This document shows positions 21,585-57,666 of a stretch of 64,000 nt of DNA, piece by piece. The notes under the pieces were generated by a model. It saw only the letters and a list, made by a program, of their open reading frames with translations. It did no database searches and had not been told where the DNA came from. The stretch lies in the IMG/VR virus record IMGVR_UViG_3300032288_004964, positions 1-64,000 of that record; one strand, given 5' to 3'. How positions within the stretch are numbered: position 1 is the stretch's first letter; each line of letters opens with the position of its first letter. The translations under genes were made by a program, and so were the position numbers.

Positions 21585-22331
21585 ATGAAACTTGTGAAGT
21601 ATTTAGAATTTAATCAATCTGATTTAAACGCTGTTAAATCATTTAGAATAAAAGATGATCTTAATCCTAAACTTTGGAAAGGATTTGAGATTAATGAAGA
21701 AGTTAGAGAAGATTTATTGAAAATTGCTCAAGATTTCTATGAATCTACTGAATTAAAAGCAGATGTTAAAGATATTGCTCTTACTGGGTCTTTAGCTAAC
21801 TATAACTGGTCTGAGAAGTATTCTGATTATGACTTACATATATTAATAGATTTTAATGACATTAACCAAGATGTTGAATTGGTTAAAAAATATGCGGATA
21901 GTGTTAAGAACATATGGAATAAAAATCATGATATCAAGATAAAGGGGTATGAAGTAGAGGTTTATATACAAGATATATCGGAACCACATAAATCAACCGG
22001 TATATTTTCCTTATTAAATAATAAATGGAATGTTAAACCTGAAAAAATAGAATTTACACCAGATGAAGATATGATAGCTGAAAAGGGAAAGTCAGTTATG
22101 ATGTTGGTTGATGATTTAGAAAAAGAAGTTGATGAAGATAAATATGAAGCTTTTGTTGAAAAAGTTCAGAAAGTATGGGATAAGGTTAAAAACTATAGAA
22201 AGAGTGGATTAGAAAGTGAAGGTGGTGAACTATCTATTGGTAATTTAGTTTTCAAGTTACTTAGAAGAAATGGGTATATTGAAAAAATAATGGACTTAAA
22301 AAGAAAGTCTTATGATAAACAATTTAAATAA
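21585..22331 (+). CDS. Pol-beta superfamily nucleotidyltransferase
   Basis: LTGSLANYNW...SDYDLH (GS...DxD) and EVEVYIQD. Confidence 0.8.
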   Translation: MKLVKYLEFNQSDLNAVKSFRIKDDLNPKLWKGFEINEEVREDLLKIAQDFYESTELKADVKDIALTGSLANYNWSEKYSDYDLHILIDFNDINQDVELVKKYADSVKNIWNKNHDIKIKGYEVEVYIQDISEPHKSTGIFSLLNNKWNVKPEKIEFTPDEDMIAEKGKSVMMLVDDLEKEVDEDKYEAFVEKVQKVWDKVKNYRKSGLESEGGELSIGNLVFKLLRRNGYIEKIMDLKRKSYDKQFK

Positions 22332-22334
22332 TTT

Positions 22335-23225
22335 ATGAAAGCTAAATACACAACTGAGAATTATATAGAGATGTGTAATAAAATACATGGAGATAGATAT
22401 GACTATTCTATGTTAGTTTACAATGGATTTAAAAACAAAGTATCTATAGTTTGTAAAAATCATGGAGTTTTTGAACAGAGAGCACAAGCACACTTAGAAG
22501 GACAGTGTTGTATAAAATGTTATAATGAAAGTAGAAATATAACTAATAGTGAGTTTATAAAAAAGTCTATAGAAATACATGGTGATAAATACACATATTC
22601 TGATTTTGTATCATTAAAAAAGAAAATACAAATTTTTTGTAAAAAACATGGATATTTTATACAAATGCCCTATAGACATCTAAAGGGACAGGGTTGTAAT
22701 TCATGTTCAAGAGAATTACATAGAATATCTCAGCAAGATTTTATAGAAAGATCCACAAAGATACATAAGGGTATTTATGATTACAGTAATGTTAAATACA
22801 TAAATCATTCTACTAAGGTAGATATTATTTGTAAAAAACACGGATCATTTAAACAGACACCAAACAATCATATGATTCATAGGAAAGGATGTATAAAATG
22901 TAGTAAAATGATATCTAAAATGGAGACAGATTGGTTAGACAAACTCGGTATCTATAATAGGCAACATAGAATTATTATTGAGAATAGAACATATATTGTT
23001 GATGCCTTTGATGTTTCTAATAAGATTATCTATGAGTTTTATGGAGATTATTGGCATGGCAATCCTAATATATACAGTCTGGATCTTATTAATAAAGTAA
23101 ATAATAAGAGTTTCGGTCAACTATATAAAGAAACTATAGATAGAGAAAAAACATTTTATAGAAATGGATATAAAGTTATTTCTATTTGGGAAGATGAATT
23201 TAAAAAAATGATTAAAAATGATTAA
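22335..23225 (+). mobile_element. Putative homing endonuclease (DUF723-like Zn repeats + Vsr/PD-(D/E)xK-like nuclease domain)
   Basis: Three HG..YDYS...K..I.C..HG.F.Q....H..G..C..C repeats; C-terminal YEFYGDYWHGNP...GYKVISIWE. Confidence 0.8.
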
Positions 23226-23910
23226 AATTTCAGAAATAGAACAATTGTTCAAAGACATATTCGAATCAGAAGATGGTGTGGTTAACTCAGTTGAGACTAT
23301 ATATGAAGCTCCTAAACATGGAGATTTTCTTAAATTGATAATTTCTATTCAGGGATTATCTGTAGAAGATGTGTCTATTATACATACTAAATTTATCTTT
23401 AAGGTAGATGAGGAAAAGAGAGAACTTATTGAGGACTCTTTTATTTACTTATATGATATTAATTGCGTTTATCACCAAATACAGATAAAAAACATAATAG
23501 ATATGAAGAAAAAAATTGAGGATATTATAGATTCTAATGATTTTGGAGAAGATATACAGATACTTTCTGACTTTATAGAGTCACCCGCTTTATTTCTAAA
23601 TTACTATATGAGAAGAGCTAATATAACAGAATACTCAATATTTGATGTGGAGTATCAACCTAAATTTAAAACTCAGCCTTGTTATAGAACCACATTTGAT
23701 TTCAAAATCAATATTAATAATAACTACAATATTGATTTGTCTATCTATAAGGTAGACACTGATGAGTTAGATGAATCGGATATTTATAGGTTTCAATTCA
23801 AATTTATGGATGAAATTCAAACAGTTGAAACAGACACATTGAAAAATATACATTATTTTATTGGAGATAACATAGCTAAAATTTTAGATAAAAAATTGAA
23901 AAATAAATAG
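23218..23910 (+). CDS. Hypothetical protein
   Basis: 230-aa ORF. Confidence 0.75.
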   Translation: MIKISEIEQLFKDIFESEDGVVNSVETIYEAPKHGDFLKLIISIQGLSVEDVSIIHTKFIFKVDEEKRELIEDSFIYLYDINCVYHQIQIKNIIDMKKKIEDIIDSNDFGEDIQILSDFIESPALFLNYYMRRANITEYSIFDVEYQPKFKTQPCYRTTFDFKININNNYNIDLSIYKVDTDELDESDIYRFQFKFMDEIQTVETDTLKNIHYFIGDNIAKILDKKLKNK

Positions 23911-23912
23911 AT

Positions 23913-24912
23913 ATGATAAAGAAATTTTACGAATTTAATGAATCATTAAAGAAAGTTGATAGTGGTGTAAAGAGAAAATTTGTGCCAAGTGGTTGGGTGA
24001 ATGTAAAAGTAGATAATGAATTATCTATCAGGATATCTAGATATGTTAAGTCTCTTGATAAAACATTAGCTACTAGACATAGAGCCAATTTATATGAGAA
24101 GATAAATAAACTTGGTAATATATCTAGTATAAAATATTTCTATGCAAACAAAAATAGGTATAATTACCCTTTTACAATATTTAAGAGAGATAAAAACACA
24201 ATTTAATGCACCATCTGGTGGGTTTCTCTTAGAGTCATTTTTGGCTGGTTTGATTTATGGTAAATTAGAAGAAACCGGTTTTGGAACTGCTGATTTAATA
24301 AATGATGATAGATCACTTATATATGATGTTGATAAGGAAGAGCTAAAATACCAAATCAAATTTTATAAACCAGGTTCTTCAATAAAAGTAAATATGAATG
24401 AAATTTGTGACTATTATGTTATTGCGTTAAGAGATGGTCAAAATGTTTCTGTTAATATTTTAGATGGAAAGAATATGGATGATCCTAGTTATATTGGTTA
24501 TTTTTCTACTAAAATACAAGGAACCGATGATTTTATAAGAGAAGATTCCAAAGGACAACATCTTATTATAAATACCAACAGATTAGGTTCACATACTTTC
24601 AAAGTTTTATTAAACTTGGATAATATAGATGAAAATATTGAAAAGATAGGTAAAGATGTTAAAAAGTCTATATCTGATGTTTATGATGCTATTTCCGATT
24701 TACACTATGATGTTGATGCTGTTATAACCGGAGTAGATAAGTTTAAAAGAAACATGAAGGTGGATAAGGCTTATCTAAGAGTTGAAAAGGATATACAAAA
24801 ACTTCAAGATAGTTTAAAACTGTTCACATTACACTATAAAGATACAATATATTCACCATCAATTGGTATATTTGGTGGAAGAAGAATACCACAAACAACA
24901 TCAACAACATAA
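23913..24912 (+). pseudogene. Probable single gene split by a +1 frameshift (ORFs 23913..24206 and 24142..24912)
   Basis: The ORFs overlap by 65 bp. Removing one A from the A4 run at 24131-24134 fuses them (...SINISMQTKIG...). Confidence 0.5.
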
Positions 24913-25550
24913 TGAGATATTTAGAAAATTTTGTTACATATATAAATGAGTCTACTGAAGATATCACTGATTTAACTAAAGAACAATTAGATGATTTACT
25001 TATTCCTATTAATGATTTAGGAGTAGAATATGATTTCTCAACGCCTAGTACAATAACAGATGGTGAGTTTGCTGGATATAAATCAATGAGTATTCATTTT
25101 AAAAATGATTTCAAACTTGATTCCGATAGAATTGTGGATGAAAGATTTTGGGATTTTTTAGATGAGTTAATAGCACTTAAAAATAGACTAGAAAGCTCAA
25201 GAGTTTCTATTAATTCAAATTGGAAAAATTATATAGTTATTAATTTTATTCAAAAAGCTAAAGTAGAAGGTGATTTATTTACAATTCAAAAGCTTTACAA
25301 TGATATGAATGCTAAAACAAATCATTCTAAAAGTGATTTTAACTATGGACTAGTTAAGAGGTTATATCCTGAAGAATTAAAGATTGTTGTTACCTGTGGT
25401 GGTAGTTTTGGAACCTCTGAATATACTGATAGAAAATGGAATACTCTTTTCAGAGGTGTAGATTTTTCTAAATTTAATGTTGATAAGAAAATTACTACTG
25501 ATGGATATGGTTATAAAAGTGCAACCGTTACAATTACTCTAAAAAAGTAA
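24912..25550 (+). CDS. Hypothetical protein with capsid-targeting-like N-terminus
   Basis: MRYLENFVTYINES. Confidence 0.7.
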   Translation: MRYLENFVTYINESTEDITDLTKEQLDDLLIPINDLGVEYDFSTPSTITDGEFAGYKSMSIHFKNDFKLDSDRIVDERFWDFLDELIALKNRLESSRVSINSNWKNYIVINFIQKAKVEGDLFTIQKLYNDMNAKTNHSKSDFNYGLVKRLYPEELKIVVTCGGSFGTSEYTDRKWNTLFRGVDFSKFNVDKKITTDGYGYKSATVTITLKK

Positions 25551-28653: not shown

Positions 28654-29103
28654 TTAGAAAGGAGCTTCATCATCTTCTAATCCTTCTCCATAATAGAAGT
28701 TAAATACTAAAAGTGGTTTGCCATCTTTAGTTTCCCACATTTCAAATTCAGAGTCATATTGAGGAAGAATATCTCTTTTTAATCTTTTAGCAGTGTCAAA
28801 AACACTTATAATTGATTCAATCTTTTCTCTATAACCCATAGTAACTGATATTGTTATATCAAGTTCATCATGTTCAACATAAACATCTTTAATACCTTTA
28901 TTCTTGAACATAGTTCTTAGTAAATATAGAAGGTTATCCATATCTGAATCACCAATCATTTCATCTTCCTCTTCTTCTTCGGTTGCCTTCTTTGAATGAT
29001 TTGGTCTACCAAAAAGATATTCATCATCATTATAATATGATTCATCTTCATCATAATCTTGTTCGTATTCTTCGAATAGTTCTTTATAATTCTTTAGTTT
29101 CAT
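28654..29103 (-). CDS. Acidic hypothetical protein with capsid-targeting-like N-terminus
   Basis: MKLKNYKELFEE. Confidence 0.75.
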   Translation of the reverse strand: MKLKNYKELFEEYEQDYDEDESYYNDDEYLFGRPNHSKKATEEEEEDEMIGDSDMDNLLYLLRTMFKNKGIKDVYVEHDELDITISVTMGYREKIESIISVFDTAKRLKRDILPQYDSEFEMWETKDGKPLLVFNFYYGEGLEDDEAPF

Positions 29104-30490: not shown

Positions 30491-30907
30491 TTAAATTATA
30501 ATTTCATATGAATTTGTATAATCAACCTTTACTTGACCATCATTCATACCTTTTTCTTTTTTAACAAACTTTCTTTGACAATAAACAATAGTAGCTTTTT
30601 CATCTTTTGGTGATTTACTATTCTTTTTAGCGAATTCTGCCGCCTTTTTTAAAACTTCTTTACTTGGAATTAACATTTCTTTTGTTGATGTTATTTCTTT
30701 TGTTTTAATCACAACATGACTACCAGGAACTCCTTTAACATGCATCCATATATCATCATTTTCTGCTATATTAAATGTTAGATAATCATTAGACTTGGCA
30801 TCTTTACCAATATAGACTGTAAATCCATCTATTTCCTTCTTTTGTATATTTGGAAATTTATCCTTTTTAGATTCTAAATATAATTTGAAATTACTAATGT
30901 GTTTCAT
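30491..30907 (-). CDS. NFACT RNA-binding (DUF814) domain protein
   Basis: IGKDAKSNDYLT...DIWMHVKGVPGSHVVI...AAEFAKKNSK...V.K..G...GQV. Confidence 0.9.
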   Translation of the reverse strand: MKHISNFKLYLESKKDKFPNIQKKEIDGFTVYIGKDAKSNDYLTFNIAENDDIWMHVKGVPGSHVVIKTKEITSTKEMLIPSKEVLKKAAEFAKKNSKSPKDEKATIVYCQRKFVKKEKGMNDGQVKVDYTNSYEIII

Positions 30908-30933
30908 AATGTATATATTAATTATTTAAAAAG

Positions 30934-30981: not shown

Positions 30982-32664
30982 TTAGTTAAGGTACTGTTTA
31001 GTATCAGTAACTGTAATAGTCATAAATTGTTTTTGAGGATACCAACCCACTTCAGCAACTGCATATCTTGATCTTAGTAACATTCTTGGTGCGAAAGTCG
31101 CTTCAGAAATTACAGAGATAGACTGAGCCATTAAATAAGGTACGAAAATGATACCTGGTTGGTCAGGATTGTTCTTTCTACCAAGAACGATTCTGTTGTC
31201 ATTATACTTCATGTATGGATCAACATAGATAGAAATATCTCCAATAGAACCTACTGGGTAAAGTTGACCTTGAGAGTTCATCTTAGATTTAACTGGGTTA
31301 ATTGTGTAACCAGAAATATCAGATAAAGCTGCTGCAAGACCTCCGTTTGTGATAAGGTATTGAGCTGGACCAACACGTCCTTCAGTTGCGATGTAGTTAG
31401 ATGCGTGAGCGATCTTAGTAACTAATTTTCTTTGAACTGCGTGTGTAGTTTCACCACCTAAAGTAGATGTAGCGTAAGCTGTATCTAAGTCAAAGATAGT
31501 AACTGCTGCTCCACCTGCTGTAGAAGCTGGTGCGTTAGTAGCATTAAGAGCACCCATTTCGAAAATCTTAGCAACAATTTGTTTAGAGATTGTTTGAGAT
31601 AATTCGTTAACAAGGATTGACTCCATTTTTTGAACGATATCCATACCTGTGTTAGCTTTGATATCTTCGATTTCAGTTCTTCTTAAAGCTGAAGATACTT
31701 CAATAGTACCAACTGCGATAGTCTTAGAAGAAATCTTAGGACCAATTACACCAGCATAGTTATCATCATCAGCTTGTCTTCCCATTGGGTAAGAACCAGC
31801 AGCTTGACCGCTAGAAGCAGATGTCCAGTTTGCAGAGAAACCTGGGATATGATCTTCTAAAGCTGAAATTAATTCAATAGATAAAGTACCAAATGAAGAA
31901 GCTGTAACACCAGCGATGTTAGTAATAACTGCTGTCATTGCACCTGTAGCAGGGAATGTGTTATCTGCTGCAACAAAAGTGTTAGGAACTACATTGCTAC
32001 CAGAAGTGTTAGCTTGTCTGTAAGCTCTGAACATTGGGTGACCATCGATACGAGAGAAACCTAAGAATTCAACTTGGTTAGTTTTTGTACCTGGCTCAGA
32101 GTAAGCTAAAACACCAGTTGAAATGTTATTCCACATTCTACCGTTAGATAAACCACCTGAGTTTTGAACAATACTAGATGCTGTTAAACCTGCTGTTAAA
32201 GCCGCGTTAACTGCTGTTAAGCTAGTAGCACTAAGTTTGAACACCATTGGTCTATCATTGTAGTTCTGGTTGATATCATCATATTGAAAATCAATATAAA
32301 GTAAGTCGATTTTTGGACCAGGAGTTGGCTTTACAGCTACTAAGTCTAAACCGATTGTTTGAGCAGCAATTTTCATAGCTACTGGAAGTAAGTTTTGACC
32401 TACATCTCCATTACCTGCTTGAGCACCTACACCAGCACCGTAAGCACCACCTAAAGTGTTACCTGCTAATGAACCTACTACTGGGTTTAATACAGCTCCC
32501 ATACCTGCTACGTTTGTAGCGTTAACGTAAGCGTTTTCATTGATTGAGTGAAATTCAGCATATTCAGCCATCCATTCAGCTCTTTCTCCAGTTACACCCA
32601 TGTTCTCTAATACTGGAGACCACTTCTTAACTGCTTTTTGTTTGTCTATTCTAATGTGTGACAT
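30982..32664 (-). CDS. Major capsid protein (T4 gp23-like)
   Basis: KWSPVLE, AQTIGLDLVAVKP, ELSQTISKQI, IYVDPY, GIIFVPY, F.PR.L.RSRYA; strongly biased codon use. Confidence 0.93.
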   Translation of the reverse strand: MSHIRIDKQKAVKKWSPVLENMGVTGERAEWMAEYAEFHSINENAYVNATNVAGMGAVLNPVVGSLAGNTLGGAYGAGVGAQAGNGDVGQNLLPVAMKIAAQTIGLDLVAVKPTPGPKIDLLYIDFQYDDINQNYNDRPMVFKLSATSLTAVNAALTAGLTASSIVQNSGGLSNGRMWNNISTGVLAYSEPGTKTNQVEFLGFSRIDGHPMFRAYRQANTSGSNVVPNTFVAADNTFPATGAMTAVITNIAGVTASSFGTLSIELISALEDHIPGFSANWTSASSGQAAGSYPMGRQADDDNYAGVIGPKISSKTIAVGTIEVSSALRRTEIEDIKANTGMDIVQKMESILVNELSQTISKQIVAKIFEMGALNATNAPASTAGGAAVTIFDLDTAYATSTLGGETTHAVQRKLVTKIAHASNYIATEGRVGPAQYLITNGGLAAALSDISGYTINPVKSKMNSQGQLYPVGSIGDISIYVDPYMKYNDNRIVLGRKNNPDQPGIIFVPYLMAQSISVISEATFAPRMLLRSRYAVAEVGWYPQKQFMTITVTDTKQYLN

Positions 32665-32743: not shown

Positions 32744-34882
32744 TTAAATGTTTTTGAATCTTTCCATAATTGCAGTAACTTCATTATCTGAAAGTTTATC
32801 TTCTTGTATTAAACTTTCATGAGCTACTAACTTTTTAGTTATAGATTCATTTTTCTTGAAATTTCTAGTTAACCAGAAATGTTCAATTTGACTTTCAGTT
32901 TTTAATACATCTTCTGGGTATAATCTAGCTTGTGAAAGCGCAGACTTTTTAGAAGATTCATTTAACTGTTCCCAGATTGGCTTAATGTTTTCAGGCATCA
33001 ATCTGATTACTCTTTCTTCAAGAGATTCATTCTTTGTAGATAGGGCTTCTGCGATCAGAGTAAGTACTTCTTTCTGTGTGAAATAACTTCTTTCGTTTAT
33101 GTGAAATTTAACAGTTTCCTGTTCTTCATCTGATAGTGCATAAAAGCTATCAACTTGAGACTTGTTTAAGAATTTTAAGAAATTCAAGTCTGTTGTTTCA
33201 GAAACTTTACGTTTTTTAGCTTCTTCAATTAGTTTATTAATAGATTCAGATAACTCAGATTCGCTGTTCATATTCATATGAACTTCTTCTTCGTGAGCTT
33301 CTTCTTCTTTCTCTTCTTCTTTAGCATAAGCTTCTTCTTCATGAGCTGGTGCGATACCATTCTCTTCATAAGATTCTTCTTCATGAGCTTCTTCTTCTTT
33401 AGCAAAAGCTTCTTCTTCATGAGCTGGTGCGATACCATTCTCTTCTTGATCCATTGGACCACACTCTTCTTCTTTCTCTTCTTCTTTATTCCAATTTTCT
33501 ACAGATTCAAAACCTGCAGCATCAAGACTAGGGAAATTTTCTTCTTCACCAGCTGATTCATTTAATTTAGAGCTGTTTAATCTTTCTACAATCATTCCTT
33601 GGTAAGAAATTGATTTGTCTAAGTTTTCAGCGATATATTCAGAATAAGCAATATTATCATCTAAGTGTTCAGCGATGTATTCAGAGTAAGCGATGTTACC
33701 TTCAACATGTTCAGCTAAATATTCAGAATAAGCAATTGAGTTATCAACATGCTCAGCTAAGTATTCAGAATAAGAAATGTTCTTATCTAAATTTTCAGCG
33801 ATATATTCAGAGTAAGCAATGTTCTTATCTAAATTTTCAGCGATATATTCAGAGTAAGCAATATTTTTGTCTAAATTTTCAGCGATATATTCAGAATAAG
33901 AAATGTTCTTATCTAAGTTCTCAGCTAAGTATTCAGCGTAAGCAATATTCTTATCTAAGTTCTCACCTAAATATTCAGAATAGTTAATTGATTTTTCTAG
34001 ATTTTCAGCTAAATAATCATTGTGTTTAATTAGTTTATCAGCAGTTTCTTTTAATGATTTATTTTCATTAACCATAACTTGGAATTTCTCAGCTAGATAA
34101 TCTAAATATTTAATTACTTGAGAATTAGTTGTATTTAATTCTTCATAGTATTCTAATAGTTGCTCTAATTTCTTAGGATTCATATTACCCTTAGAAATTG
34201 CACCTTTAACTTCTTTCTTAGTAGAAGCTAGTTCATTAACTAAGTACTTAGAGTAGTCAGTTAATTGTTGCTTTGTAACATAATCACTTTTGTTCATGTT
34301 AAATAATTCGTTAATTTTTGACTCATCGGACATTTCATATATCCTGAAGTTAGATTTTGGGTTTGTGAATCCTAAAGACTCATTAAGAACTTTTACACTC
34401 ATTTTAGCTGATGCGAAACCTGGGTCAGCAACAATATCATAAGTGAATAATTTCTTTAGTGCAACTGAACCGTCAGCTTCTGTGATACCTGCCGCTCTTG
34501 AAGAAACGAATACAGGACATCCATCATCTACTAATGATTTAGCCTCTTTACCCCAGTAAGTACTTAGTAATCTAATCTCACCTGTAACCAGGTTAGATTC
34601 TTTTACATAATCAGCTTTGGTGATTATGTGAGAAGCTCTTGAAAGTGATGTATCAAATACATCTGGATGATCAAACTCACCATAAACAGCACCAAGTGTG
34701 TTCATTCTTTCATTAAGTTCTTCTAAAGCAGGAAGAAATTTATCAGCTGTATATACTCTCTCATTACGGTTTTTTACTCCGAATTCTGTGAATGTACCAC
34801 CTAATATATAATCCTTCTTACCAGTGCTACTCTCTCTAATAAGAGATGTAGTTGAATTTTCTACAATTAAAACTGGTTTCAT
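32744..34882 (-). CDS. Prohead protease (gp21-like) fused to scaffold/core (gp22-like) domain
   Basis: KNRNERVY, GEFDHP, SHII, VSSRAAG, TYDIVADPGF; followed by 14-aa repeats and an acidic region. Confidence 0.9.
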   Translation of the reverse strand: MKPVLIVENSTTSLIRESSTGKKDYILGGTFTEFGVKNRNERVYTADKFLPALEELNERMNTLGAVYGEFDHPDVFDTSLSRASHIITKADYVKESNLVTGEIRLLSTYWGKEAKSLVDDGCPVFVSSRAAGITEADGSVALKKLFTYDIVADPGFASAKMSVKVLNESLGFTNPKSNFRIYEMSDESKINELFNMNKSDYVTKQQLTDYSKYLVNELASTKKEVKGAISKGNMNPKKLEQLLEYYEELNTTNSQVIKYLDYLAEKFQVMVNENKSLKETADKLIKHNDYLAENLEKSINYSEYLGENLDKNIAYAEYLAENLDKNISYSEYIAENLDKNIAYSEYIAENLDKNIAYSEYIAENLDKNISYSEYLAEHVDNSIAYSEYLAEHVEGNIAYSEYIAEHLDDNIAYSEYIAENLDKSISYQGMIVERLNSSKLNESAGEEENFPSLDAAGFESVENWNKEEEKEEECGPMDQEENGIAPAHEEEAFAKEEEAHEEESYEENGIAPAHEEEAYAKEEEKEEEAHEEEVHMNMNSESELSESINKLIEEAKKRKVSETTDLNFLKFLNKSQVDSFYALSDEEQETVKFHINERSYFTQKEVLTLIAEALSTKNESLEERVIRLMPENIKPIWEQLNESSKKSALSQARLYPEDVLKTESQIEHFWLTRNFKKNESITKKLVAHESLIQEDKLSDNEVTAIMERFKNI
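33605..34025 (-). repeat. Ten tandem 42-bp (14-aa YSEYIAENLDKNIA) repeats
   Basis: Directly visible in the translation. Confidence 0.95.
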
Positions 34883-35911: not shown

Positions 35912-37615
35912 TTAGAATTCGAATTCACCACCTGCTTCTCCTCCACCCTCAGCTGGTGCTTCTGGTGCTGCTTGAGCTTCTGGTGCTGCTTGAGCCCCAC
36001 CACCTTCTGGTGCTGCTTGAGCCCCACCACCTTCTGGTGCTGCTTGAGCTCCACCTTCTGCTCCTGGTTCTCCAGTTGCTCCGGCTCCGGCTCCTGTATC
36101 TTTTGCCCAATATTTTTGATTTTCGGCTTTTTCTTCTGGTGTCAATTTGAATATTCTATCCATAATCCACTCAATATGGAAGTAAGGTTTTTCACCATTC
36201 ATAACACCTAATAATGTTCCAACTATTTCAGATTTCTTAGCTAGATTATTTATTTTCTTCCACTCTTCAAATACTTGATTTGAATTGAACTTAATATCTA
36301 CTTCATTTATAAATCTTTCATCATCTTTTAGTTCTGGAAACTCAATTAACATTTGTAGTTTAATAGGTTTAACTATTAATTCTTTGAAGTTTGCTCTTAT
36401 TCTATTGATAAAGTTGTAGAATTTAATTTCATCTCTTGTCATCTCAGCAGCATCTGTTACTAAATTACCACCACCATTCTCTGCCTCAAATCTATTCATT
36501 GGTATTCTAGAAGCTCTTTTTAATGCTTTATAGAACCAAGATAACATAGTTTCATCATTTAAGTCATGTCCAGTTGGTGACATTAATTCCATATTTGGTG
36601 TACCTGCGTCTCCTTCTGGAAACCATATTTGTTTATTATATGGTAAATGTTTAGAACCATTTATTGTTAAAGTTCCTAATGAGTCATCCCATTCAACTTC
36701 TTCTGAGTAATCATGTATTAATTGACCAATTTGTTCTTCTGCTCTTTGACGAGACATACCTTTAATAGGAATAGTAAACTTTTGATAAATTGTTGCGTTG
36801 ATTATATTAAACATAATTCTTGTTTGCTCAAGAATCTTTAATTGATTATAAGGTTTGATTAAACCTTCTACATAAGATGTTTCTGAATAATCATTTTGCG
36901 TAGAATATGAAATATAAACTATTTGAGAATCTAAAAATATTCTTCTTAGTTGAGGATCTTCTGGAAATTGAATCCAAAGATGTCCAATACTAGGTTCAAA
37001 AGCCGGAACTAATGTTTCGGGTCTTAGTCTATTGAATCCAATAATATTTTTCTTTTTGTCATCATAAATAATTTCAACAGCTACATATCCATCTATTAAA
37101 AAATCTTTTATCATCATCCAAGCTGTGATACTATCAGAGAATCCAAACTTATTATAAACCTTTTCAAAATACTCTTGATACTTATCTTGAACTTCTTGTG
37201 GGTAGTCATTGGGAAGTGCTTTAGGTGAACAGAAATCATTATCATCACTATAAACAATACATTCATCGGCTACCGAACTTATAAAATCTCTTAATTCATC
37301 TTTAATTGAATACTCTCTAAGAATTCTTCTTTTGTCAGCATAAGCTTTATCTAAATAAGGAATAGATTTTCTATTTAAAACTGAGGCAACTGCTCTCTGT
37401 GAGAAGAAATCATACATTGAGTTTCCTCTAGCTGAATAGGGGTCTTCATTAATACCAACACCTACTTGGTTTCTAACAATCATGTCATCATATTTCATAC
37501 CATATGATGATAGTCCTCTTAGTATTCTACTGAATAGACCTTTGTTTTCAACTGCAGAATTTGCGCTAAAATTACTATTACTATTGTTTTGTCCAAATGA
37601 ATTATATGTTGCCAT
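35912..37615 (-). CDS. Portal protein (T4 gp20-like)
   Basis: FLIDG, SYVEGLIKPYNQLKILE, YKALKRASRIP, EMTRDEIKF..FI.R.R..F; low-complexity GGAQAAPE tail. Confidence 0.92.
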   Translation of the reverse strand: MATYNSFGQNNSNSNFSANSAVENKGLFSRILRGLSSYGMKYDDMIVRNQVGVGINEDPYSARGNSMYDFFSQRAVASVLNRKSIPYLDKAYADKRRILREYSIKDELRDFISSVADECIVYSDDNDFCSPKALPNDYPQEVQDKYQEYFEKVYNKFGFSDSITAWMMIKDFLIDGYVAVEIIYDDKKKNIIGFNRLRPETLVPAFEPSIGHLWIQFPEDPQLRRIFLDSQIVYISYSTQNDYSETSYVEGLIKPYNQLKILEQTRIMFNIINATIYQKFTIPIKGMSRQRAEEQIGQLIHDYSEEVEWDDSLGTLTINGSKHLPYNKQIWFPEGDAGTPNMELMSPTGHDLNDETMLSWFYKALKRASRIPMNRFEAENGGGNLVTDAAEMTRDEIKFYNFINRIRANFKELIVKPIKLQMLIEFPELKDDERFINEVDIKFNSNQVFEEWKKINNLAKKSEIVGTLLGVMNGEKPYFHIEWIMDRIFKLTPEEKAENQKYWAKDTGAGAGATGEPGAEGGAQAAPEGGGAQAAPEGGGAQAAPEAQAAPEAPAEGGGEAGGEFEF

Positions 37616-41369: not shown

Positions 41370-41706
41370 TTGATCCTTCAATTGAAATTAATTTAATTAA
41401 GTGTTCATTATCGCCTTTCTTTTTATAGAGTTCATTATAACCTTTAGCGATTCCTCTTTTGAATACTTCTGTAAAATATGCGAAAGCATTTACAGATTTT
41501 TCTTCATTGAAATTATACCAGTTTTGAAACATATCAAGTAGTCCTGACTGATAACAATCTAATTTGTCATCATTTGACCAGTATCTCATTTTCTTGATTG
41601 TTTTTTTCGCTAATAATTCTAACATTTTTTCAGCGTTTCTTGTTAATTTTCCTTGTGCTTTTGACACTATGACCTCAATATAGAGATCTTTATTATTTAA
41701 ATAGAT
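41341..41706 (-). CDS. Late-transcription sigma factor (T4 gp55-like); start uncertain
   Basis: In-frame YLNNKDLY upstream of GTG 41667 (cf. gp55 YVNNKEL); NF...KS.NAFAYFT motif. No in-frame ATG precedes YLNNK. Confidence 0.75.
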   Translation of the reverse strand: MYLNNKDLYIEVIVSKAQGKLTRNAEKMLELLAKKTIKKMRYWSNDDKLDCYQSGLLDMFQNWYNFNEEKSVNAFAYFTEVFKRGIAKGYNELYKKKGDNEHLIKLISIEGSNDGMGLHSL

Positions 41707-45642: not shown

Positions 45643-46023
45643 TTATTTTTTTACCCAGTTATATTCTGGATGCTTTTTTATTACTTTATCCCAAAATCCT
45701 CCACTAACATCTTGGTCTATAATAATTGTAAAATCTTTATCTATTGAACTTAATATTACTCTCATGACTTCTTGTGATAAACCTTTTTCTCCGGTTGAAT
45801 TTACAATAGATTTTATTTCAATTGAATCTTTCCCAAATTTTAACATAAGAGCTTTGAGTGGTAGTTTAGAATCTATTCTAACATTTGGTTTTCCTGACTT
45901 ATCAAGAATAGATGATGCTAATATTGTATTATTAGTAATTTGAACATTTGTAAATATTTCTGATAACTTATTAGATATCTTATCCATTAATGTATATTCT
46001 TTATATTCTCTAATTAATCTCAT
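45643..46023 (-). CDS. Hypothetical protein (start reassigned to MRLIREYKEY)
   Basis: ATG at 46023 follows directly after the upstream stop; possibly GNAT-like. Confidence 0.65.
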   Translation of the reverse strand: MRLIREYKEYTLMDKISNKLSEIFTNVQITNNTILASSILDKSGKPNVRIDSKLPLKALMLKFGKDSIEIKSIVNSTGEKGLSQEVMRVILSSIDKDFTIIIDQDVSGGFWDKVIKKHPEYNWVKK

Positions 46024-46024
46024 A

Positions 46025-46639
46025 TTATTTAATTGGACAACTATTAGCAGTATAAATATACTTATAGTCTCTTTTAATTTTAACACCTAAACTCTCAGCT
46101 GTGGTAACAACATCTTCTAGACATTCTGAATCAGCTCCTCCAACAATAGTAACTTCTTTCCCATTTAAGGATTTTAATAACTCATATAGTTTTTTAGGGC
46201 ATTGAAACCAAACATGTTTGTTTCCTATATAAGTAATAATAGTTCCTTCTTTAGTATTGAATATATCACCTTTCTTCAGTGATTTAGATTCTTCCATCTC
46301 ACTTATTTTATCATAAACTTCTTTATCTAATATCTTTTTATAGAAATCAGCATCTACATCATAATTATATCTCTTTTCAATTAAATCTTTTTGATTTGGG
46401 AAATGATATAAGTCATCATGTATAGGAACTTCAGGTTCATCTTCATATAGATAATCTTTATCTACATTCTTACCGTCTATATGGTTGTCCCAAAGTTGGT
46501 AGACATTTTGAAAGTTACTACAATACTTATTCAATTCATTTAGGTACATTTCTGAAAAGAATTTCTTAAATGATTTCTGAACATCAACTATAATTAATGT
46601 ACCATTACTATAACTTTCAAATGTTTTAAGATATCTCAT
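46025..46639 (-). CDS. Isochorismatase/cysteine hydrolase family protein
   Basis: LIIVDVQ, EKRY, VGGADSECLEDV. Confidence 0.75.
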   Translation of the reverse strand: MRYLKTFESYSNGTLIIVDVQKSFKKFFSEMYLNELNKYCSNFQNVYQLWDNHIDGKNVDKDYLYEDEPEVPIHDDLYHFPNQKDLIEKRYNYDVDADFYKKILDKEVYDKISEMEESKSLKKGDIFNTKEGTIITYIGNKHVWFQCPKKLYELLKSLNGKEVTIVGGADSECLEDVVTTAESLGVKIKRDYKYIYTANSCPIK

Positions 46640-46704: not shown

Positions 46705-47229
46705 TTATGCTGGTAATTCTTCACCACCTTCTGGTGCTTCTTCCTCTTTAGTTTCTTCTTCAGCTTCTTGAGTTTGAGCTTGAGGCTCTTCAAATTCTTC
46801 ACCTTGTGATTGAGCTTGTGGCTGAGCTTCGGTTTGAACTTGTGGTTGAGCTTCAGCTTGTGGCTGAGCTTCAACTTGAGGTTGAGCCTGTGGCTGAGCT
46901 TCAGTTTGAGCTTGAGGTTGAGCCTGAGTTGATTGAGCTTGTGCTTGGCCACCCATTAATGCTCCACCAGGAATTTTTTCAACATCTAAGTTGTTCATAT
47001 TTATATACTTAACAATTTCTTCAGCGATGTCAACATCACCAAAAAACTGACGTAAATTTTTACCAGTAGTATCTTTTACTTTCTTTACATAAGCATTAAT
47101 TAATGATTGGGGAATATCAATCATAGTTTTTACTTTGTAGATATCGTTTACTTGGAAAACAGATTCTTTAATAATCTCTTCTCTCTTACTCTTAGTACGA
47201 TAATTTTCAAATGTTCTAATATGCTTCAT
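46705..47229 (-). CDS. Hypothetical protein with Q/A/P/E-rich tail, likely head-associated
   Basis: MKHIRTFENY N-terminus; late promoter at 47253. Confidence 0.75.
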   Translation of the reverse strand: MKHIRTFENYRTKSKREEIIKESVFQVNDIYKVKTMIDIPQSLINAYVKKVKDTTGKNLRQFFGDVDIAEEIVKYINMNNLDVEKIPGGALMGGQAQAQSTQAQPQAQTEAQPQAQPQVEAQPQAEAQPQVQTEAQPQAQSQGEEFEEPQAQTQEAEEETKEEEAPEGGEELPA

Positions 47230-53532: not shown

Positions 53533-56175
53533 ATGAAATATTTAAAGGGTAGAGATAATTACTTAAATGAACTAAAGGTAAATAGTGGACTTGTACCATA
53601 TGCAAAAAACGATTCTATTGCTTCTATAAATGAAGAAGTAATGACTAATACAATTACCTGGGGTGATTCATTATTAGGTAGACTAATAAACTCTGCTATT
53701 AGAAAAGCAAAGGTTGGTGTTAATTTAGTTAGAATAAGTAGTGTTATTAAATCTCTTTATAAGTTATTTGATGAGATGGTGGCAGATGGTGTTATTAAAG
53801 AGATGCCAGTTGTTAGTAGAATAAAGATTTACAAATTCGCTTTAATTAAGTTTATTGAAGAAATTGAAAAGGTTGCTGCTGATCCATCAGATTATGTATT
53901 AAATGAACCAGGTGTTGAAGTTGAAGTTGAAGATATAGATGAGATTAAGAATATGACTGATGGTGTAATAACTGAGATAGAGAAGTATATGAGTGATATC
54001 ATATCAACTGGTCAATCTAGTGGTGAGATTCCAAAGAATGAAATAGATGAGTTAGAATTAGATAAAAAGGACTTAATAGACGCACTTACTAAGTTTAGAG
54101 AATCTTTAGATGAAATAAAAGCTCCTGAAGGTGATAAAGAAGAAACATCCGTAGTTTCAGAGCCTAAAAAGGAAACGGGTCTGGTATATTCTGAAAATAT
54201 GGCGAATAACTTAAAGTCCGTTTATATGATATTATTTTATTATCACCAAACTATATTATCTAAAAAGCCAGCATCTGGAGTTAATAAAGCCGAAGTGGTA
54301 AAAAAACCACAACCAGAAAATATTGTTAAAAGCTCTGTAGTTGATAAAAGTAAAGTTGCTGAGTCCGTACTATTAAATGAGTCGGTGCTAAATCCTAACC
54401 TATCAAATGCTATTAAGCCATTATATACTTACTTTAAGAATGAAGGTCAATTTACCTTTCCTAGTGAATCAAAGGGTAGAGAAAATGAATTTCATAAATT
54501 TCTTAGTGGGAATAAAGATGGTATATTAAAAGTATATAAATCAATTAGTTTAATTAAAGAAGATTTAAAAACTCTACTAACAAAACCAGAAAAGGTTGGT
54601 GGTCATATATTTAATTTATATAAAACTACCAGAACTAAACCAAATGGTGATTTTCAAGGAGTTGATGGTGATTTTCAGAGTCAGATTAAGATATTTAATA
54701 CTACAATGAAGTCAATTTTAGACTCTATAAAGGTTGAAACAAAAGTAGAGACTAGTGAAGATGGTGTTGAGGTTGGTAAGAAGTATAAATATACTAATAA
54801 AGAAGGAGAGACTAAAGATGTGTTGGTTGTTGATAAAGATAAAGTTGTTCAACCAGGTCCTGATAAAAAATTCCTAACCGGTGATGATAAAAAGGGAAAA
54901 GAATTGGAAAGTGGTCTTGTTTCAGTAGCTTCTGATAAATCAAAGGTTACATTCCCTGTGAGCCCAGAATCTCTAAAGAAAGAATCTAAATTAATATCTA
55001 GCTATCTTGATTTTATAAAAGAAGCTGATGAGAATAAAGATACCTGGTTAGTAAAAGTTCATGAGTCGTGGAGAAATAATTTTTTAGGTAATTTTAAAAA
55101 TCTAAAGAAGTATAAATTAACACAAGAGGAAGTTGATAAATTAACACAAGAAGTTGAAAAGGCTAGTAAGAATACTAAATCTCTTAAAATAGTTGGTAAA
55201 GATCCGGTTATAGAGGTTGTTAGACTATTCAATAGAGCTTATAGATTACACACTACTCAAGTTATACCAACAGGTAGAAGTGGTGGAAAAGTTTCTAATA
55301 AAACCTTTATGGAATATACATGTTTTGGAAGTGGTAGTCCGGATACTGCTGGTCAATCAGGTGGTCCATATAGAAATAACGCTGTATTTTCAAAATGGGA
55401 AAATGCTGTTTTAGATATAGTATCATCATCTAAATATAGAATCATTTTTAATGAAGAAGCTACTATACAAGTAGGTGAGGGTAATCCTGTTAAAGATTTT
55501 GGTAGAAAATTATTAAATTTTATGAATGAGTTATTAGATGATACTCAATTATATAAAGAAGGTGAGCAAAAGAAATTCATAAATAAATATTTTAATGTTG
55601 ATATTCAAACTAAAGAACTAAATTCTCCTGGTAAAAATGATACTGGGTCTAATGATAAACTATCTAAACAACAGAAACAAAAAAATGTCGACTTTACTGA
55701 ACAAGATGAGATTAAATTTGAAGAAGGTCAGATTTTTAAATTTAATTATAAAGAAGGTACTTTATATGGATATGTTTATAGTATAAAGAATAATAAGACA
55801 TATATTAAATTTAGTAAGAATCACTTATTTGTTAAGAAATATCTACCAGGTGATATTAAATTTAAAACAAATCCTAAATCTGTTGATGGTCCGGTTTATT
55901 TTGCTGAGATTAAAGGAACTAAACTTACTAAGAATACATATAAACTTGATAGTTGTTTAGATGTCTCTAAAAAAGTCGAAAAAAATGAAGTAGATAAATC
56001 ATTTAATATAGAATTTAGACCATCTAAGATGTATTTACTTAAAGAAGATGGGTCCACTGAATCTTATACTGTTAATACACAGGCTGATGACTTTGACTCA
56101 AATAGATTTTTGGTGAAAAGAGATTCAAAGAAACCAAAAGGATTTGATGGTTGGTATAAACTATTCATTTCATAA
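53533..56175 (+). CDS. Large hypothetical protein, likely internal head protein
   Basis: 880 aa; MKYLKGRDNYLNE; multiple (L/I)xE sites; late promoter at 53500. Confidence 0.7.
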   Translation: MKYLKGRDNYLNELKVNSGLVPYAKNDSIASINEEVMTNTITWGDSLLGRLINSAIRKAKVGVNLVRISSVIKSLYKLFDEMVADGVIKEMPVVSRIKIYKFALIKFIEEIEKVAADPSDYVLNEPGVEVEVEDIDEIKNMTDGVITEIEKYMSDIISTGQSSGEIPKNEIDELELDKKDLIDALTKFRESLDEIKAPEGDKEETSVVSEPKKETGLVYSENMANNLKSVYMILFYYHQTILSKKPASGVNKAEVVKKPQPENIVKSSVVDKSKVAESVLLNESVLNPNLSNAIKPLYTYFKNEGQFTFPSESKGRENEFHKFLSGNKDGILKVYKSISLIKEDLKTLLTKPEKVGGHIFNLYKTTRTKPNGDFQGVDGDFQSQIKIFNTTMKSILDSIKVETKVETSEDGVEVGKKYKYTNKEGETKDVLVVDKDKVVQPGPDKKFLTGDDKKGKELESGLVSVASDKSKVTFPVSPESLKKESKLISSYLDFIKEADENKDTWLVKVHESWRNNFLGNFKNLKKYKLTQEEVDKLTQEVEKASKNTKSLKIVGKDPVIEVVRLFNRAYRLHTTQVIPTGRSGGKVSNKTFMEYTCFGSGSPDTAGQSGGPYRNNAVFSKWENAVLDIVSSSKYRIIFNEEATIQVGEGNPVKDFGRKLLNFMNELLDDTQLYKEGEQKKFINKYFNVDIQTKELNSPGKNDTGSNDKLSKQQKQKNVDFTEQDEIKFEEGQIFKFNYKEGTLYGYVYSIKNNKTYIKFSKNHLFVKKYLPGDIKFKTNPKSVDGPVYFAEIKGTKLTKNTYKLDSCLDVSKKVEKNEVDKSFNIEFRPSKMYLLKEDGSTESYTVNTQADDFDSNRFLVKRDSKKPKGFDGWYKLFIS

Positions 56176-56178
56176 ATT

Positions 56179-56206
56179 AAAAACCCATCACAAAATGATG
56201 GGTTTT
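56179..56206 (+). terminator. Intrinsic terminator
   Basis: AAAACCCATCA-caaaa-TGATGGGTTTT. Confidence 0.8.
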
Positions 56207-56225
56207 CTTTTTAATATATACATTA

Positions 56226-57074
56226 ATGAGAGCTTACTTTTTTGATATAGATAGTATATTAACATTTGATAATAAGGTTTGGATTGTAGATAAGTCTAAT
56301 CCTAATATACCTTTATTAAGAATAAATCAATCTGATTTTAATTTGATTAAATCTGGTGTTTACAAGAACCAAGGTAATAAAATAAACTTTGCTGGTAATT
56401 TTTACTGGGTTCCAACTGACTTAATGAATAAGATTAAGATTAAATGTAAAAACTCTAAATCTGACATTTCTAAGTTAGCCTTTTCAATGCAAGAATTTAT
56501 GAATAAAGAATTAATTGAAAATATTAATTATGATATTAATATTGAAAATATAATGCATGTTAAGAATACAGATGATCACATCTATTTAATTTGTTCTAAG
56601 AATACTAAAAGAAATTATGAGTCTATAATAAAGAAGATTGAGGATAAATTAAAAGACAATGGAATGGTCATTAAAAACTATTATTTCATCTCTGAGACAT
56701 TTTATAATAGAAATGAAGATAATATTTCACATAAGAAAGTTAGACTCTTATTACAACATCTAATAGGGTTAAAAACGGATGATAATAAGTTTACATCTGA
56801 AGAAATAGAGGAATATAATGAGGTTTGTTTTTATGATGATGAGATAGGTGCTATAAATTTAGCAAAAAAATCAAATGATGTTTTACAGATACTATTATCA
56901 AATACTGATCCTGATATCAAAACTAAAATAAAAGAAAAGCTTAAGTCTAAAGAACATATTTTATATGTTAATCTAGTAACTCATAATAAAGTTAATAAAT
57001 TTATTATGGATAAAGTAATAATAGGTTGGAGTAACCTTATAAAAGCATTTGAGAGCTTTAATTGGAAGTCATAA
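56226..57074 (+). CDS. HAD-like hypothetical protein
   Basis: YFFDID (DxD) and FYDDE motifs. Confidence 0.55.
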   Translation: MRAYFFDIDSILTFDNKVWIVDKSNPNIPLLRINQSDFNLIKSGVYKNQGNKINFAGNFYWVPTDLMNKIKIKCKNSKSDISKLAFSMQEFMNKELIENINYDINIENIMHVKNTDDHIYLICSKNTKRNYESIIKKIEDKLKDNGMVIKNYYFISETFYNRNEDNISHKKVRLLLQHLIGLKTDDNKFTSEEIEEYNEVCFYDDEIGAINLAKKSNDVLQILLSNTDPDIKTKIKEKLKSKEHILYVNLVTHNKVNKFIMDKVIIGWSNLIKAFESFNWKS

Positions 57075-57111
57075 TGTCCTTTTTTACAAAAAAATTATTA
57101 ATATATATAAT

Positions 57112-57666
57112 ATGATACATTTAAAATCATATTTACCATTTTTGGAAGAAATTGATATCAGTGCAAATGATTCTCCAAATCTAAAAATTGCTAAAACAAG
57201 TTTAAATTCTGAAAATGATGAGATACAAGAGTTTAAAACTAAACTAAAGCCAGGTTTGGATAGGCTTTACAAGGATATTAAAGATCCTGTAGAGAGAGAT
57301 AAAAAGGTTACTCAGTTATTAGGAGATGAAAATGTAAATAAGTATGCTAATGATTATAAGATTATTCTAAATGATATAGAAAGCCTGGAGAAAAAGCAAA
57401 ATTCAATATTATCTGATGTAGCTGATATAAATGCTGATAAGAGTTTATTAGCATCATCATCAAGTACTGCAGATAATAAGGATATAAAAGCTAGAATAAA
57501 TCAACAAATAGCTGAAAGAAATATGAAAAAGTCTAAAACTATATCTGAGATTAATAAATTAAAAACAGATATTGATAAAAGACAGTCAGATTTTAAACAA
57601 AAAATGACAAAAAATATTCAAGATGTTGAAAATGATATAAAAACTTTATCTAAAGGTCAAAAATAG
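57112..57666 (+). CDS. Coiled-coil hypothetical protein (start reassigned to MIHLKSYLPFLEE)
   Basis: ATG lies just after TAATATATA (57099-57107). Confidence 0.7.
   Translation: MIHLKSYLPFLEEIDISANDSPNLKIAKTSLNSENDEIQEFKTKLKPGLDRLYKDIKDPVERDKKVTQLLGDENVNKYANDYKIILNDIESLEKKQNSILSDVADINADKSLLASSSSTADNKDIKARINQQIAERNMKKSKTISEINKLKTDIDKRQSDFKQKMTKNIQDVENDIKTLSKGQK

What the first reader, a model, noticed from the sequence alone, without database searches (positions are those of the whole stretch)
21585..57666. At least ten unrelated proteins share a T4 capsid-targeting-like N-terminus, including three with enzyme/RNA-binding domains
Seen: MKLVKYLEFNQS (nucleotidyltransferase), MIKKFYEFNES, MRYLENFVTYINES, MKLKNYKELFEE, MKHISNFKLYLES (NFACT-R), MIKNWDKFNEG, MRLIREYKEY, MRYLKTFESY (isochorismatase), MKHIRTFENY, MKYLKGRDNYLNE, MIHLKSYLPFLEE. 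C-terminal variants are IMRFEEFSE and LIKAFESF. Most follow late promoters. Known: T4 internal proteins use MKTYQEFIAE-type signals cleaved after Glu by gp21. Inference: a portable tag loads a cargo set into the head for injection at infection.
Basis: partly seen in the sequence, partly recalled or inferred. Interest (0 to 1): 0.65.

Follow-up and report, generated by a model that had tools for sequence, protein, structure and literature searches.

The report
Shared head-targeting-like tag on phage proteins
A freshwater huge phage puts the same short N-terminal peptide, which resembles the signal phage T4 uses to load proteins into its head, on about one in six of its proteins; this may mark a very large set of proteins delivered with the DNA, but no experiment has tested it.

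Summary
The window is the first 64 kb of a 385-kb freshwater huge phage with a T4-type head module: gp23-like capsid protein, gp20-like portal, and a gp21-like protease fused to a repeat-rich scaffold. Across the genome, 76 of 446 ORFs (17%) carry the tag M-[KR]-x-[LI]-[KR]-x-[FY] followed by Glu at residue 8-13, against 8 of 1916 internal-Met windows. With the tag removed, these proteins fall into 69 BLAST families.

Synonymous codons vary freely, so selection acts on the peptide. The tag lies outside the fold in two AlphaFold models. In 107 of 111 NFACT-R orthologues, tags of 9-15 residues always end in Glu-Ser or Glu-Gly just before the conserved body. Tagged genes are enriched behind the AT-rich motif that also precedes the head genes. 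Relatives share the tag; four other AT-rich T4-like jumbo phages do not.

All this fits a T4 CTS-like propeptide cleaved after Glu. Packaging, cleavage and injection are untested. The cargo is mostly acidic, unlike T4 internal proteins. The two C-terminal "variants" are not supported. Of the three named domains, only NFACT-R passes Pfam.

The parts
21585..22331 (+). Tagged gene, 248 aa, borderline tag; probable nucleotidyltransferase-fold body
   Evidence: ORF. Tag profile 7.8 bits. phrog_36119, function unknown. No Pfam hit. Atlas neighbours are PF01909 clusters at 0.97-0.98. Promoter-like motif ends 5 nt before the ATG.
23913..24206 (+). Tagged ORF, 97 aa, canonical MIKK-type tag; overlaps the next ORF out of frame
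   Evidence: Tag profile 8.3 bits. The junction with 24142-24912 lies near an A-run, so this may be one gene split by a frameshift.
24912..25550 (+). Tagged gene, 212 aa, body unknown
   Evidence: No Pfam or PHROG hit. No promoter motif of its own.
28654..29103 (-). Tagged gene, 149 aa, very acidic (pI 4.3), last gene of the head operon
   Evidence: It lies directly downstream of the peptidase gene 29105-30454, which carries the motif.
30491..30907 (-). Tagged gene, 138 aa, NFACT-R RNA-binding domain, next to the capsid gene
   Evidence: Pfam PF05670 4.8e-16, domain from residue 25. In 107 of 111 orthologues Glu-Ser or Glu-Gly sits at the tag/body junction, with tags of 9-15 aa. In the AF2 model residues 1-16 have low confidence. 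A terminator-like hairpin and then the motif 4 nt before the ATG precede the gene.
37689..38057 (-). Tagged gene, 122 aa, immediately upstream of the portal gene
   Evidence: Motif 22 nt upstream. No family hit.
45643..46023 (-). Tagged gene, 126 aa counted from the ATG
   Evidence: It follows 46025-46639 with no gap, so the two are probably co-transcribed.
46025..46639 (-). Tagged gene, 204 aa, highly conserved; possibly an isochorismatase-like cysteine-hydrolase fold
   Evidence: 1218 homologues; the top 120 are at least 77% identical. Glu8 is invariant, Lys5 and Phe7 are at least 90% conserved, and residues 11-14 vary. In the AF2 model residues 1-10 have pLDDT 36 and the fold starts at residue 11. 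Fold matches reach Z 5-6.6 only.
46705..47229 (-). Tagged gene, 174 aa, acidic with a Gln/Ala/Pro-rich tail
   Evidence: Weak match to phrog_6015. Motif 23 nt upstream. The orthologue in LR745206 keeps the tag.
53533..56175 (+). Tagged gene, 880 aa, weaker tag, upstream of the sheath gene
   Evidence: Tag profile 8.6 bits. No family hit. Motif 24 nt upstream.
57112..57666 (+). Tagged gene, 184 aa counted from the ATG, directly before the sheath gene
   Evidence: Motif 4 nt upstream.
32744..34882 (-). Prohead protease (about residues 1-170) fused to a scaffold-like part with about 11 tandem 14-aa repeats and an acidic stretch; the proposed tag receptor and cutter
   Evidence: 31% identity to T4 gp21 over 107 aa, E 2e-6, with the His and Ser motifs kept. 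Pfam Peptidase_S77 5.6e-4, below the cutoff. The repeats, rich in [IL]-A-E, are visible in the translation.
30982..32664 (-). Major capsid protein, gp23 family, with a probable propeptide site I-N-E|N at residues 41-44
   Evidence: Pfam Gp23 2.7e-28. Matches to T4 gp23 chains in the PDB. The N-terminal alignment shows a conserved hydrophobic-x-Glu site in the relatives, aligned to I-F-E of T4 gp23.
35912..37615 (-). Portal protein, gp20 family
   Evidence: Pfam Portal_T4 9.1e-56.
41341..41667 (-). gp55-like late sigma factor, the likely reader of the AT-rich late promoter
   Evidence: phrog_234, late sigma transcription factor, 4.2e-7.

Best explanation
The shared N-terminus is a portable propeptide of about 8-15 residues that works like the T4 capsid targeting sequence. 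It is made late, together with the head proteins. Its hydrophobic positions 4 and 7 dock the protein onto the protease-scaffold core while the prohead forms. The gp21-like protease then cuts after the closing Glu and frees the mature protein inside the head. At least part of this cargo probably leaves with the DNA at the next infection. Shown here: the tag is strictly N-terminal, is selected as a peptide, sits on unrelated bodies outside their folds, ends in a fixed Glu, occurs in a phage with a T4-type head module, and is enriched on late-motif genes. Inferred: binding to the core, cleavage, residence in the virion, and injection.
For: Strict N-terminal enrichment: 76 of 446 N-termini against 8 of 1916 internal-Met windows, with no true internal hit. 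The tagged proteins fall into 69 unrelated body families with distinct Pfam domains: NFACT-R, PolyA_pol, NUDIX+AAA_33, ankyrin, 2H phosphoesterase, PQ-loop. Synonymous codon usage in the tag equals that of gene bodies. Among the 43 class-A tags, position 4 is L, I or V in all 43 and position 7 is F or Y in 41; in T4, residues 4 and 7 carry targeting and residues 8 and 10 carry processing. Hydrophobic-x-Glu occurs within 20 aa in 69 of 76 tagged proteins against 36% of the others. In NFACT-R orthologues, Glu-Ser or Glu-Gly always sits at the junction although tag length and sequence vary. The protease is homologous to gp21 with catalytic motifs kept, and proteases of this family cut after Glu in T4, phiKZ and SPN3US. 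Similar sites occur in the capsid propeptide and the scaffold repeats. The tag is low-confidence and detached in two AF2 models. The late-type motif is direct in 37 of 76 tagged genes against 79 of 370 others (p 3e-6), and direct or reachable within the same-strand run in 64 of 76 against 169 of 370. Three tagged genes lie inside the head operon. Relatives with the same capsid lineage share the tag at 14-20% of ORFs. Capacity is not an obstacle: the SPN3US head holds about 50 proteins.
Against: There are no proteomic or expression data. The T4 CTS scores only 4.5 bits against the tag profile. The cargo is acidic (median pI 5.2, 72% below 6), whereas T4 internal proteins are basic. One tagged protein is a 3-TM PQ-loop protein. 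Some tags have Glu directly after the aromatic residue, without a hydrophobic residue at P3. The late-motif enrichment was weak in relative G016: 17 of 50 against 57 of 232. The complex prediction gave no answer. Seventeen percent of genes is far more than any known CTS set.
Confidence: 0.55

Rival explanations
1. The tag is a real portable peptide signal, but for something other than the head: docking to another phage or host factor, assembly into a cytoplasmic complex, or regulation. The resemblance to the T4 CTS would then be convergent or accidental.
For: The tag has no significant sequence similarity to the T4 CTS. The cargo is acidic and includes enzymes that act in the cytoplasm, such as a CCA-adding-type enzyme and a NUDIX-kinase. 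The set is very large. The promoter link was not replicated in G016.
Against: It does not explain the fixed Glu at the tag/body junction. It does not explain the match of positions 4 and 7 to the T4 determinants, the placement of tagged genes in the head operon, or the late-motif enrichment in this genome.
Confidence: 0.25
2. The pattern comes from translation or mRNA constraints at gene starts in an AT-rich genome (Lys codon at +2, unstructured A/U-rich 5' ends, leaderless-like transcripts), not from a protein signal.
For: Many genes have the promoter-like motif only 4-9 nt before the ATG, which suggests very short leaders. The tag codons are A/T-rich.
Against: Synonymous codons vary as freely as in gene bodies. 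Conservation follows residue class (L/I, F/Y, K/R, Glu) and tolerates length changes. Four other T4-like jumbo phages with 25-31% GC have 0 tagged ORFs of 168. Untagged genes also use the 4-5 nt spacing.
Confidence: 0.07
3. The tagged proteins are one old, fast-evolving paralogue family, and the N-terminus is simply its best-kept segment.
For: Many tagged genes stand in tandem arrays (310-317 kb, 377-384 kb). A few small BLAST families exist among them.
Against: There are 69 separate families, and the bodies have different Pfam folds. The tag lies outside the fold. Different tag types sit on the same orthologous body.
Confidence: 0.05
4. The tag is a latent degradation signal. Trimming by a phage peptidase would expose an aromatic or Leu N-terminus that the phage ClpS-like adaptor reads, so that these proteins are removed at a set time.
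For: The window encodes a ClpS-like protein (48848-49132, phrog_27368) and a peptidase in the head operon (29105-30454, phrog_4191). Residues 3-4 of the tag are mostly Tyr/His and Leu/Ile.
Against: No known enzyme removes Met-Lys. His at position 3 is not an N-degron. The idea explains neither the fixed Glu nor positions 7-13. It is pure inference.
Confidence: 0.04

Closest known systems
[quoted passage not shown]
   Same: A short N-terminal peptide shared by otherwise unrelated proteins. It starts Met-Lys, has hydrophobic or aromatic residues at positions 4 and 7, and has a Glu near position 10 (T4 sequence read; determinants). The phage has gp20-, gp21-, gp22- and gp23-type head genes and a gp55-like late factor.
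   Different: There is no significant sequence identity (4.5 bits). It is on 76 proteins, against a handful in T4. Tag length is variable (9-15 aa). The cargo is mostly acidic and includes several enzyme folds. The protease and scaffold are one polypeptide. Function is untested.
Propeptides of head and ejection proteins of giant phages phiKZ, 201phi2-1 and SPN3US
   Same: These are huge phages with a gp21-related protease that cuts after Glu at a short motif. Many different proteins sit inside the head (about 50 in SPN3US). Paralogues gp53 and gp54 share identical N-terminal 15-mers, which were suggested to act like a CTS.
   Different: Those propeptides are mostly over 100 residues, the motif is A/S/G-x-E, and only 8-19 proteins are processed. 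Here the tag is 8-15 residues with an aromatic or aliphatic residue before the Glu. It belongs to a different clade, with a capsid protein close to the Mahaphage genomes.
Dar anti-restriction proteins of phage P1, loaded into the head
   Same: Defence-countering proteins are packaged in the head and delivered with the DNA (titles and abstracts; the N-terminal loading signal of DarB is from my own knowledge).
   Different: Loading in P1 depends on an ordered set of partner proteins, not on a short tag cut by a gp21-type protease. No sequence relation was tested here.

Membership tests
T4-type capsid targeting sequence | Located at the extreme N-terminus, about 10-19 residues | tested here: met
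   All hits start at residues 1-4, and none is truly internal. Tag length is 9-15 in the NFACT-R orthologues.
T4-type capsid targeting sequence | Shared by proteins whose mature parts are unrelated | tested here: met
   69 BLAST families among the 76, with different Pfam domains.
T4-type capsid targeting sequence | Targeting determinants at residues 4 and 7 (hydrophobic or aromatic) | tested here: met
   Position 4 is L, I or V in 43 of 43 class-A tags, and position 7 is F or Y in 41 of 43. That these residues actually target is not shown.
T4-type capsid targeting sequence | Ends in a gp21-type site, cut after Glu | tested here: inconclusive
   Hydrophobic-x-Glu occurs in 69 of 76, and Glu is fixed at the tag/body junction in 107 of 111 orthologues. 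Some tags lack a hydrophobic P3. Cleavage itself cannot be tested here.
T4-type capsid targeting sequence | The phage encodes a gp21-family prohead protease and a scaffolding core | tested here: met
   31% identity to T4 gp21, E 2e-6, with the His and Ser motifs kept. A repeat-rich scaffold part lies in the same ORF. The Pfam S77 score is below the cutoff.
T4-type capsid targeting sequence | Sequence homology to the T4 CTS itself | tested here: not met
   T4 IPII and IPIII N-termini score 4.4-4.5 bits, a level that 3% of internal-Met windows reach.
T4-type capsid targeting sequence | The tagged protein is incorporated into proheads and found, processed, in virions | not testable with these tools
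   No cultured relative and no proteome. No RNA runs were found either.
T4 internal proteins (cargo type) | Small basic proteins | tested here: not met
   Median pI 5.2, 72% below 6, length 64-880 aa.
Sec, Tat or lipoprotein signal peptides | Hydrophobic core of 10 or more residues after a basic start | tested here: not met
   The tag alternates charged and single hydrophobic residues. Only 3 of 76 tagged proteins have any TM-like segment.
DNA-level mobile cassettes at gene starts (T4-type promoter/stem-loop cassettes) | Conservation at the nucleotide level | tested here: not met
   Synonymous codon usage equals that of gene bodies. Upstream regions share only the short promoter-like motif.
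NFACT-R domain (30491-30907) | Pfam PF05670 above its gathering score | tested here: met
   59.7 bits against a cutoff of 29.8.
Isochorismatase-like hydrolase (46025-46639) | Family profile match or a clear fold match | tested here: inconclusive
   No Pfam hit. Foldseek gives nothing at E 0.001 or better. VIA-align's top 33 rows are nearly all isochorismatase, nicotinamidase or cysteine-hydrolase chains, but at Z 5.2-6.6. Asp19 and Cys173 are invariant.
Nucleotidyltransferase fold (21585-22331) | Family profile match | tested here: inconclusive
   No Pfam hit at 0.01. Atlas neighbours carry PF01909 at 0.97-0.98.

The most novel reading that the evidence does not exclude
A widespread freshwater clade of huge phages (176-735 kb records) marks roughly one gene in six, about 70 unrelated protein families per genome, with a short CTS-like propeptide. 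It thereby ships a very large arsenal inside the head for delivery at infection. The set includes RNA-repair and signal-degrading enzyme folds: a CCA-adding-type nucleotidyltransferase, a NUDIX-kinase, a 2H phosphoesterase resembling anti-CBASS Acb1, and NFACT-R. If so, the tag would be a sequence-readable label for injected effectors in uncultured phages.
Probability: 0.35. Interest if true: 0.85.

Novelty: new variant of a known kind. Interest (0 to 1): 0.62.

Why it matters
If the tag is a head-loading signal, the proteins a huge uncultured phage carries into the cell could be read straight from sequence. The list would be about ten times longer than in T4. That would point to candidate counter-defence and take-over proteins among hundreds of "hypothetical" genes. 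It would help explain what huge phages do with their extra capsid volume and genes. It would also offer a second, naturally diversified targeting peptide for packaging foreign proteins in phage heads. I found no paper in the searchable library that describes this tag.

Tried and rejected
- **Complex prediction.** I folded the tag (residues 1-45 of 46025-46639) with the full protease-scaffold. The result was no answer (score 0.00), so it counts neither for nor against binding.
- **Fold of the 46025-46639 model.** Foldseek against the PDB gave no match at E 0.001 or better.
Neither the 'isochorismatase' nor the 'nucleotidyltransferase' gave a hit.
- **C-terminal 'variants' at 45424-45633 and 56226-57074.** Neither reaches the profile threshold. 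I treat them as chance.
- **Depletion of host-type Bacteroidetes promoters.** A loose two-box pattern gave 1 of 76 tagged genes against 38 of 370 others (p 0.007). The single -7 box gave 6 of 76 against 35 of 370, which is not significant. I do not rely on this.
- **Replicating the late-motif enrichment in relative G016.** It was not significant.
- **Cultured relatives with virion proteomes.** tblastn of two tagged proteins against 50,697 phage records found only uncultured huge phages.
- **Possible frameshift at 23913-24912.** No orthologues among the loci in hand, so it stays unresolved.
- **RNA evidence.** No RNA run holds the region.
- **Not used or not met.** The large representative protein search was not used. 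No alternative genetic code was used.

Full report
**What the window is.** The 64-kb window is the start of a 385,333-bp virus record with 28.7% GC, estimated 95% complete. Its capsid protein (30982-32664, minus strand) belongs to the gp23 family (Pfam 2.7e-28). The portal (35912-37615) belongs to the gp20 family (9e-56).

ORF 32744-34882 carries a protease domain at its N-terminus. That domain is 31% identical to T4 gp21 over 107 residues (E 2e-6) and keeps the His and Ser motifs. About eleven tandem 14-residue repeats and an acidic stretch follow, which looks like a fused scaffold. A gp55-like late sigma factor lies at 41341-41667.

The nearest records are uncultured huge phages of more than 600 kb, with 70% capsid identity. 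These are the genomes that Al-Shayeb et al. place in the Mahaphage clade and assign to Bacteroidetes hosts. Near-identical DNA occurs in freshwater, plankton, groundwater and lake metagenomes.

**Checking the observation.** I called 446 ORFs of at least 50 aa on the whole genome and found the same N-terminus all over it.
- A loose regular expression matches 55 N-termini. When residues 2-16 are shuffled the mean is 4.1, and 15 of 2080 internal Mets match.
- A profile built from the tags reaches 8 bits on 76 of 446 N-termini. It does so on 8 of 1916 internal-Met windows, and some of those are simply mis-called starts.
- A scan of full-length proteins gave no true internal or C-terminal hit.

The consensus is Met, Lys/Arg, Tyr/His, Leu/Ile, Lys/Arg, any residue, Phe/Tyr, then a Glu at residue 8-13. 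The Glu is often followed by Ser. A shorter Met-Ile-Lys-Lys-aromatic form also exists.

**A portable peptide, not a gene family or a DNA element.**
- With the first 18 residues removed, the 76 proteins fall into 69 BLASTP families.
- Eight of them carry unrelated Pfam domains: NFACT-R (in the window), a PolyA_pol head domain, NUDIX plus an AAA_33 kinase, ankyrin repeats, a 2H phosphoesterase with a weak Acb1 match, a three-helix PQ-loop membrane protein, DUF2608, and a 2OG-Fe oxygenase with a doubtful tag.
- Synonymous codon usage in tag codons 2-13 equals that of gene bodies. Selection is therefore on the peptide.
- AlphaFold models built from deep alignments leave the tag outside the fold. 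In 46025-46639, residues 1-10 have pLDDT 36. In the NFACT-R protein, residues 1-16 have pLDDT about 50.
- Base composition does not explain it. Four other AT-rich T4-like jumbo phages (LR756500, Tenacibaculum PTm1, Sphingomonas PAU, Lak-B5) show 0 tagged ORFs of 168. LR745206 shows 9 of 45 and LR756501 shows 7 of 49.

**Evidence for head targeting and cleavage.**
- In T4, the CTS is the first ten residues of IPIII. Residues 4 and 7 carry targeting, and residues 8 and 10 carry processing. I read the T4 peptide from the T4 record. Here, positions 4 and 7 are the most constrained hydrophobic positions.
- A hydrophobic-x-Glu triplet lies within the first 20 residues of 69 of 76 tagged proteins. 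It does so in 36% of the others and in 35% of internal windows. This test is partly circular, because Glu is part of the profile.
- An independent test comes from orthologues of the NFACT-R protein. Among 111 sequences with a recognisable body start, there are 38 different tags of 9-15 residues. In 107 of the 111 the two residues before the conserved body are Glu-Ser or Glu-Gly.
- In the 204-residue family, Glu8 is invariant and the linker after it varies.
- Proteases of the gp21 family cut after Glu in T4, phiKZ, 201phi2-1 and SPN3US.
- The capsid protein has a conserved Ile-Asn-Glu|Asn at residues 41-44, which aligns with Ile-Phe-Glu of the T4 gp23 propeptide.
- The scaffold repeats are full of [Ile/Leu]-Ala-Glu. 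The protease's own N-terminus has Ile-Val-Glu at residues 6-8, much as T4 gp21 has Leu-Ile-Glu at residue 9.

**Expression.** The most enriched upstream 8-mers are AATATATA and ATATATAC, at 19-21 times background. The motif precedes the capsid, protease-scaffold, portal and terminase genes and many very large structural-size genes. With a gp55-like factor present, I take it to be the late promoter. That is an inference.
- The motif lies within 80 nt upstream of 37 of 76 tagged genes and 79 of 370 others (odds ratio 3.5, p 3e-6).
- Allowing for same-strand runs, the figures are 64 of 76 against 169 of 370.
- In the window, 7 of the 11 tagged genes have it, two of them right after terminator-like hairpins.
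- Three tagged genes sit inside the head operon.
- In relative G016 the enrichment is weak: 17 of 50 against 57 of 232.

**Spread.**
- In those loci, 257 of 937 ORFs are tagged, a sample biased by how it was chosen.
- Of 30 such contigs, 19 have a match to this capsid protein, including all six that are at least 90% complete. Two of those six matched only weakly, at the capsid N-terminal region.
- The complete 243-kb relative G016 has 50 of 282 ORFs tagged (17.7%, with a few false positives). This genome has 17.0%.

**What speaks against it.**
- The tag is not significantly similar to the T4 CTS (4.5 bits).
- The cargo is acidic (median pI 5.2), unlike T4 internal proteins.
- One tagged protein is a membrane protein.
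- Some tags lack a hydrophobic P3.
- The complex prediction gave no answer.
- There are no proteomic or RNA data.
- Capacity is not an obstacle. One copy of each tagged protein is about 2 MDa (17,933 residues), and the SPN3US head holds about 50 proteins and more than 40 MDa of ejection proteins.

**Verdict.** The CTS reading is the best explanation (about 0.55), but it is inferred. The claim that the cargo is injected is the weakest step. This is a new variant of a known kind, and I found no description of it in the searchable literature.

Noticed in passing
G000 190610-191029 (+), locus L015:10924-11340: A 139-aa protein is collinear with only the first 130 or so residues of the capsid protein: the propeptide KKW motif, the LLPxAMK stretch and the following strand. 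Similar small ORFs in relatives matched capsid residues 7-46. This could be a truncated capsid paralogue that uses the capsid's own N-terminal region.
   Followed up: partly
window 48848-49132 (+): A 94-aa ClpS-like adaptor (phrog_27368, 2e-8) follows the late-type motif. It is unusual in a phage and could bear on N-terminal recognition of proteins.
   Followed up: partly
window 29105-30454 (-): A 449-aa peptidase (phrog_4191, 2.6e-66) sits inside the head operon, between the NFACT-R gene and an acidic tagged gene. This would be a second protease in the head module, of unknown role.
   Followed up: no
window 23913-24912 (+): A 97-aa ORF with a canonical tag overlaps a 256-aa ORF out of frame, near an A-run around 24150. 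It may be one gene with a frameshift or an assembly error.
   Followed up: partly
whole genome; examples at window 30908-30920, 46640-46652, 57098-57111: The promoter-like motif (T)TAATATATA(C/G) has two distinct spacings to the ATG, 4-9 nt and 16-28 nt. The short class implies nearly leaderless late transcripts.
   Followed up: partly
window 33500-34000 (-), within 32744-34882: About eleven tandem 14-residue repeats lie in the scaffold part, each with an [Ile/Leu]-Ala-Glu triplet. An acidic Glu-rich stretch follows.
   Followed up: no
NFACT-R orthologues P0138, P0141, P0148 and others (228-241 aa): In some relatives the NFACT-R gene is called as one ORF together with an upstream gene of about 100 aa, so the tag with its Met lies internally. 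This may be a read-through call, or a polyprotein with two Glu sites.
   Followed up: no
window 40085-41176 (+): A 363-aa ORF looks like a glutamine synthetase by eye, next to the late sigma factor gene. I did not test it.
   Followed up: no
G000 314643-315176 (-), locus L022:3895-4425: A tagged 177-aa 2H phosphoesterase (2'-5' RNA ligase superfamily, 6e-9) has a sub-threshold match to anti-CBASS Acb1 (1.2e-5, 25.6 bits against a cutoff of 27). It lies in a tandem array of twelve tagged genes.
   Followed up: partly
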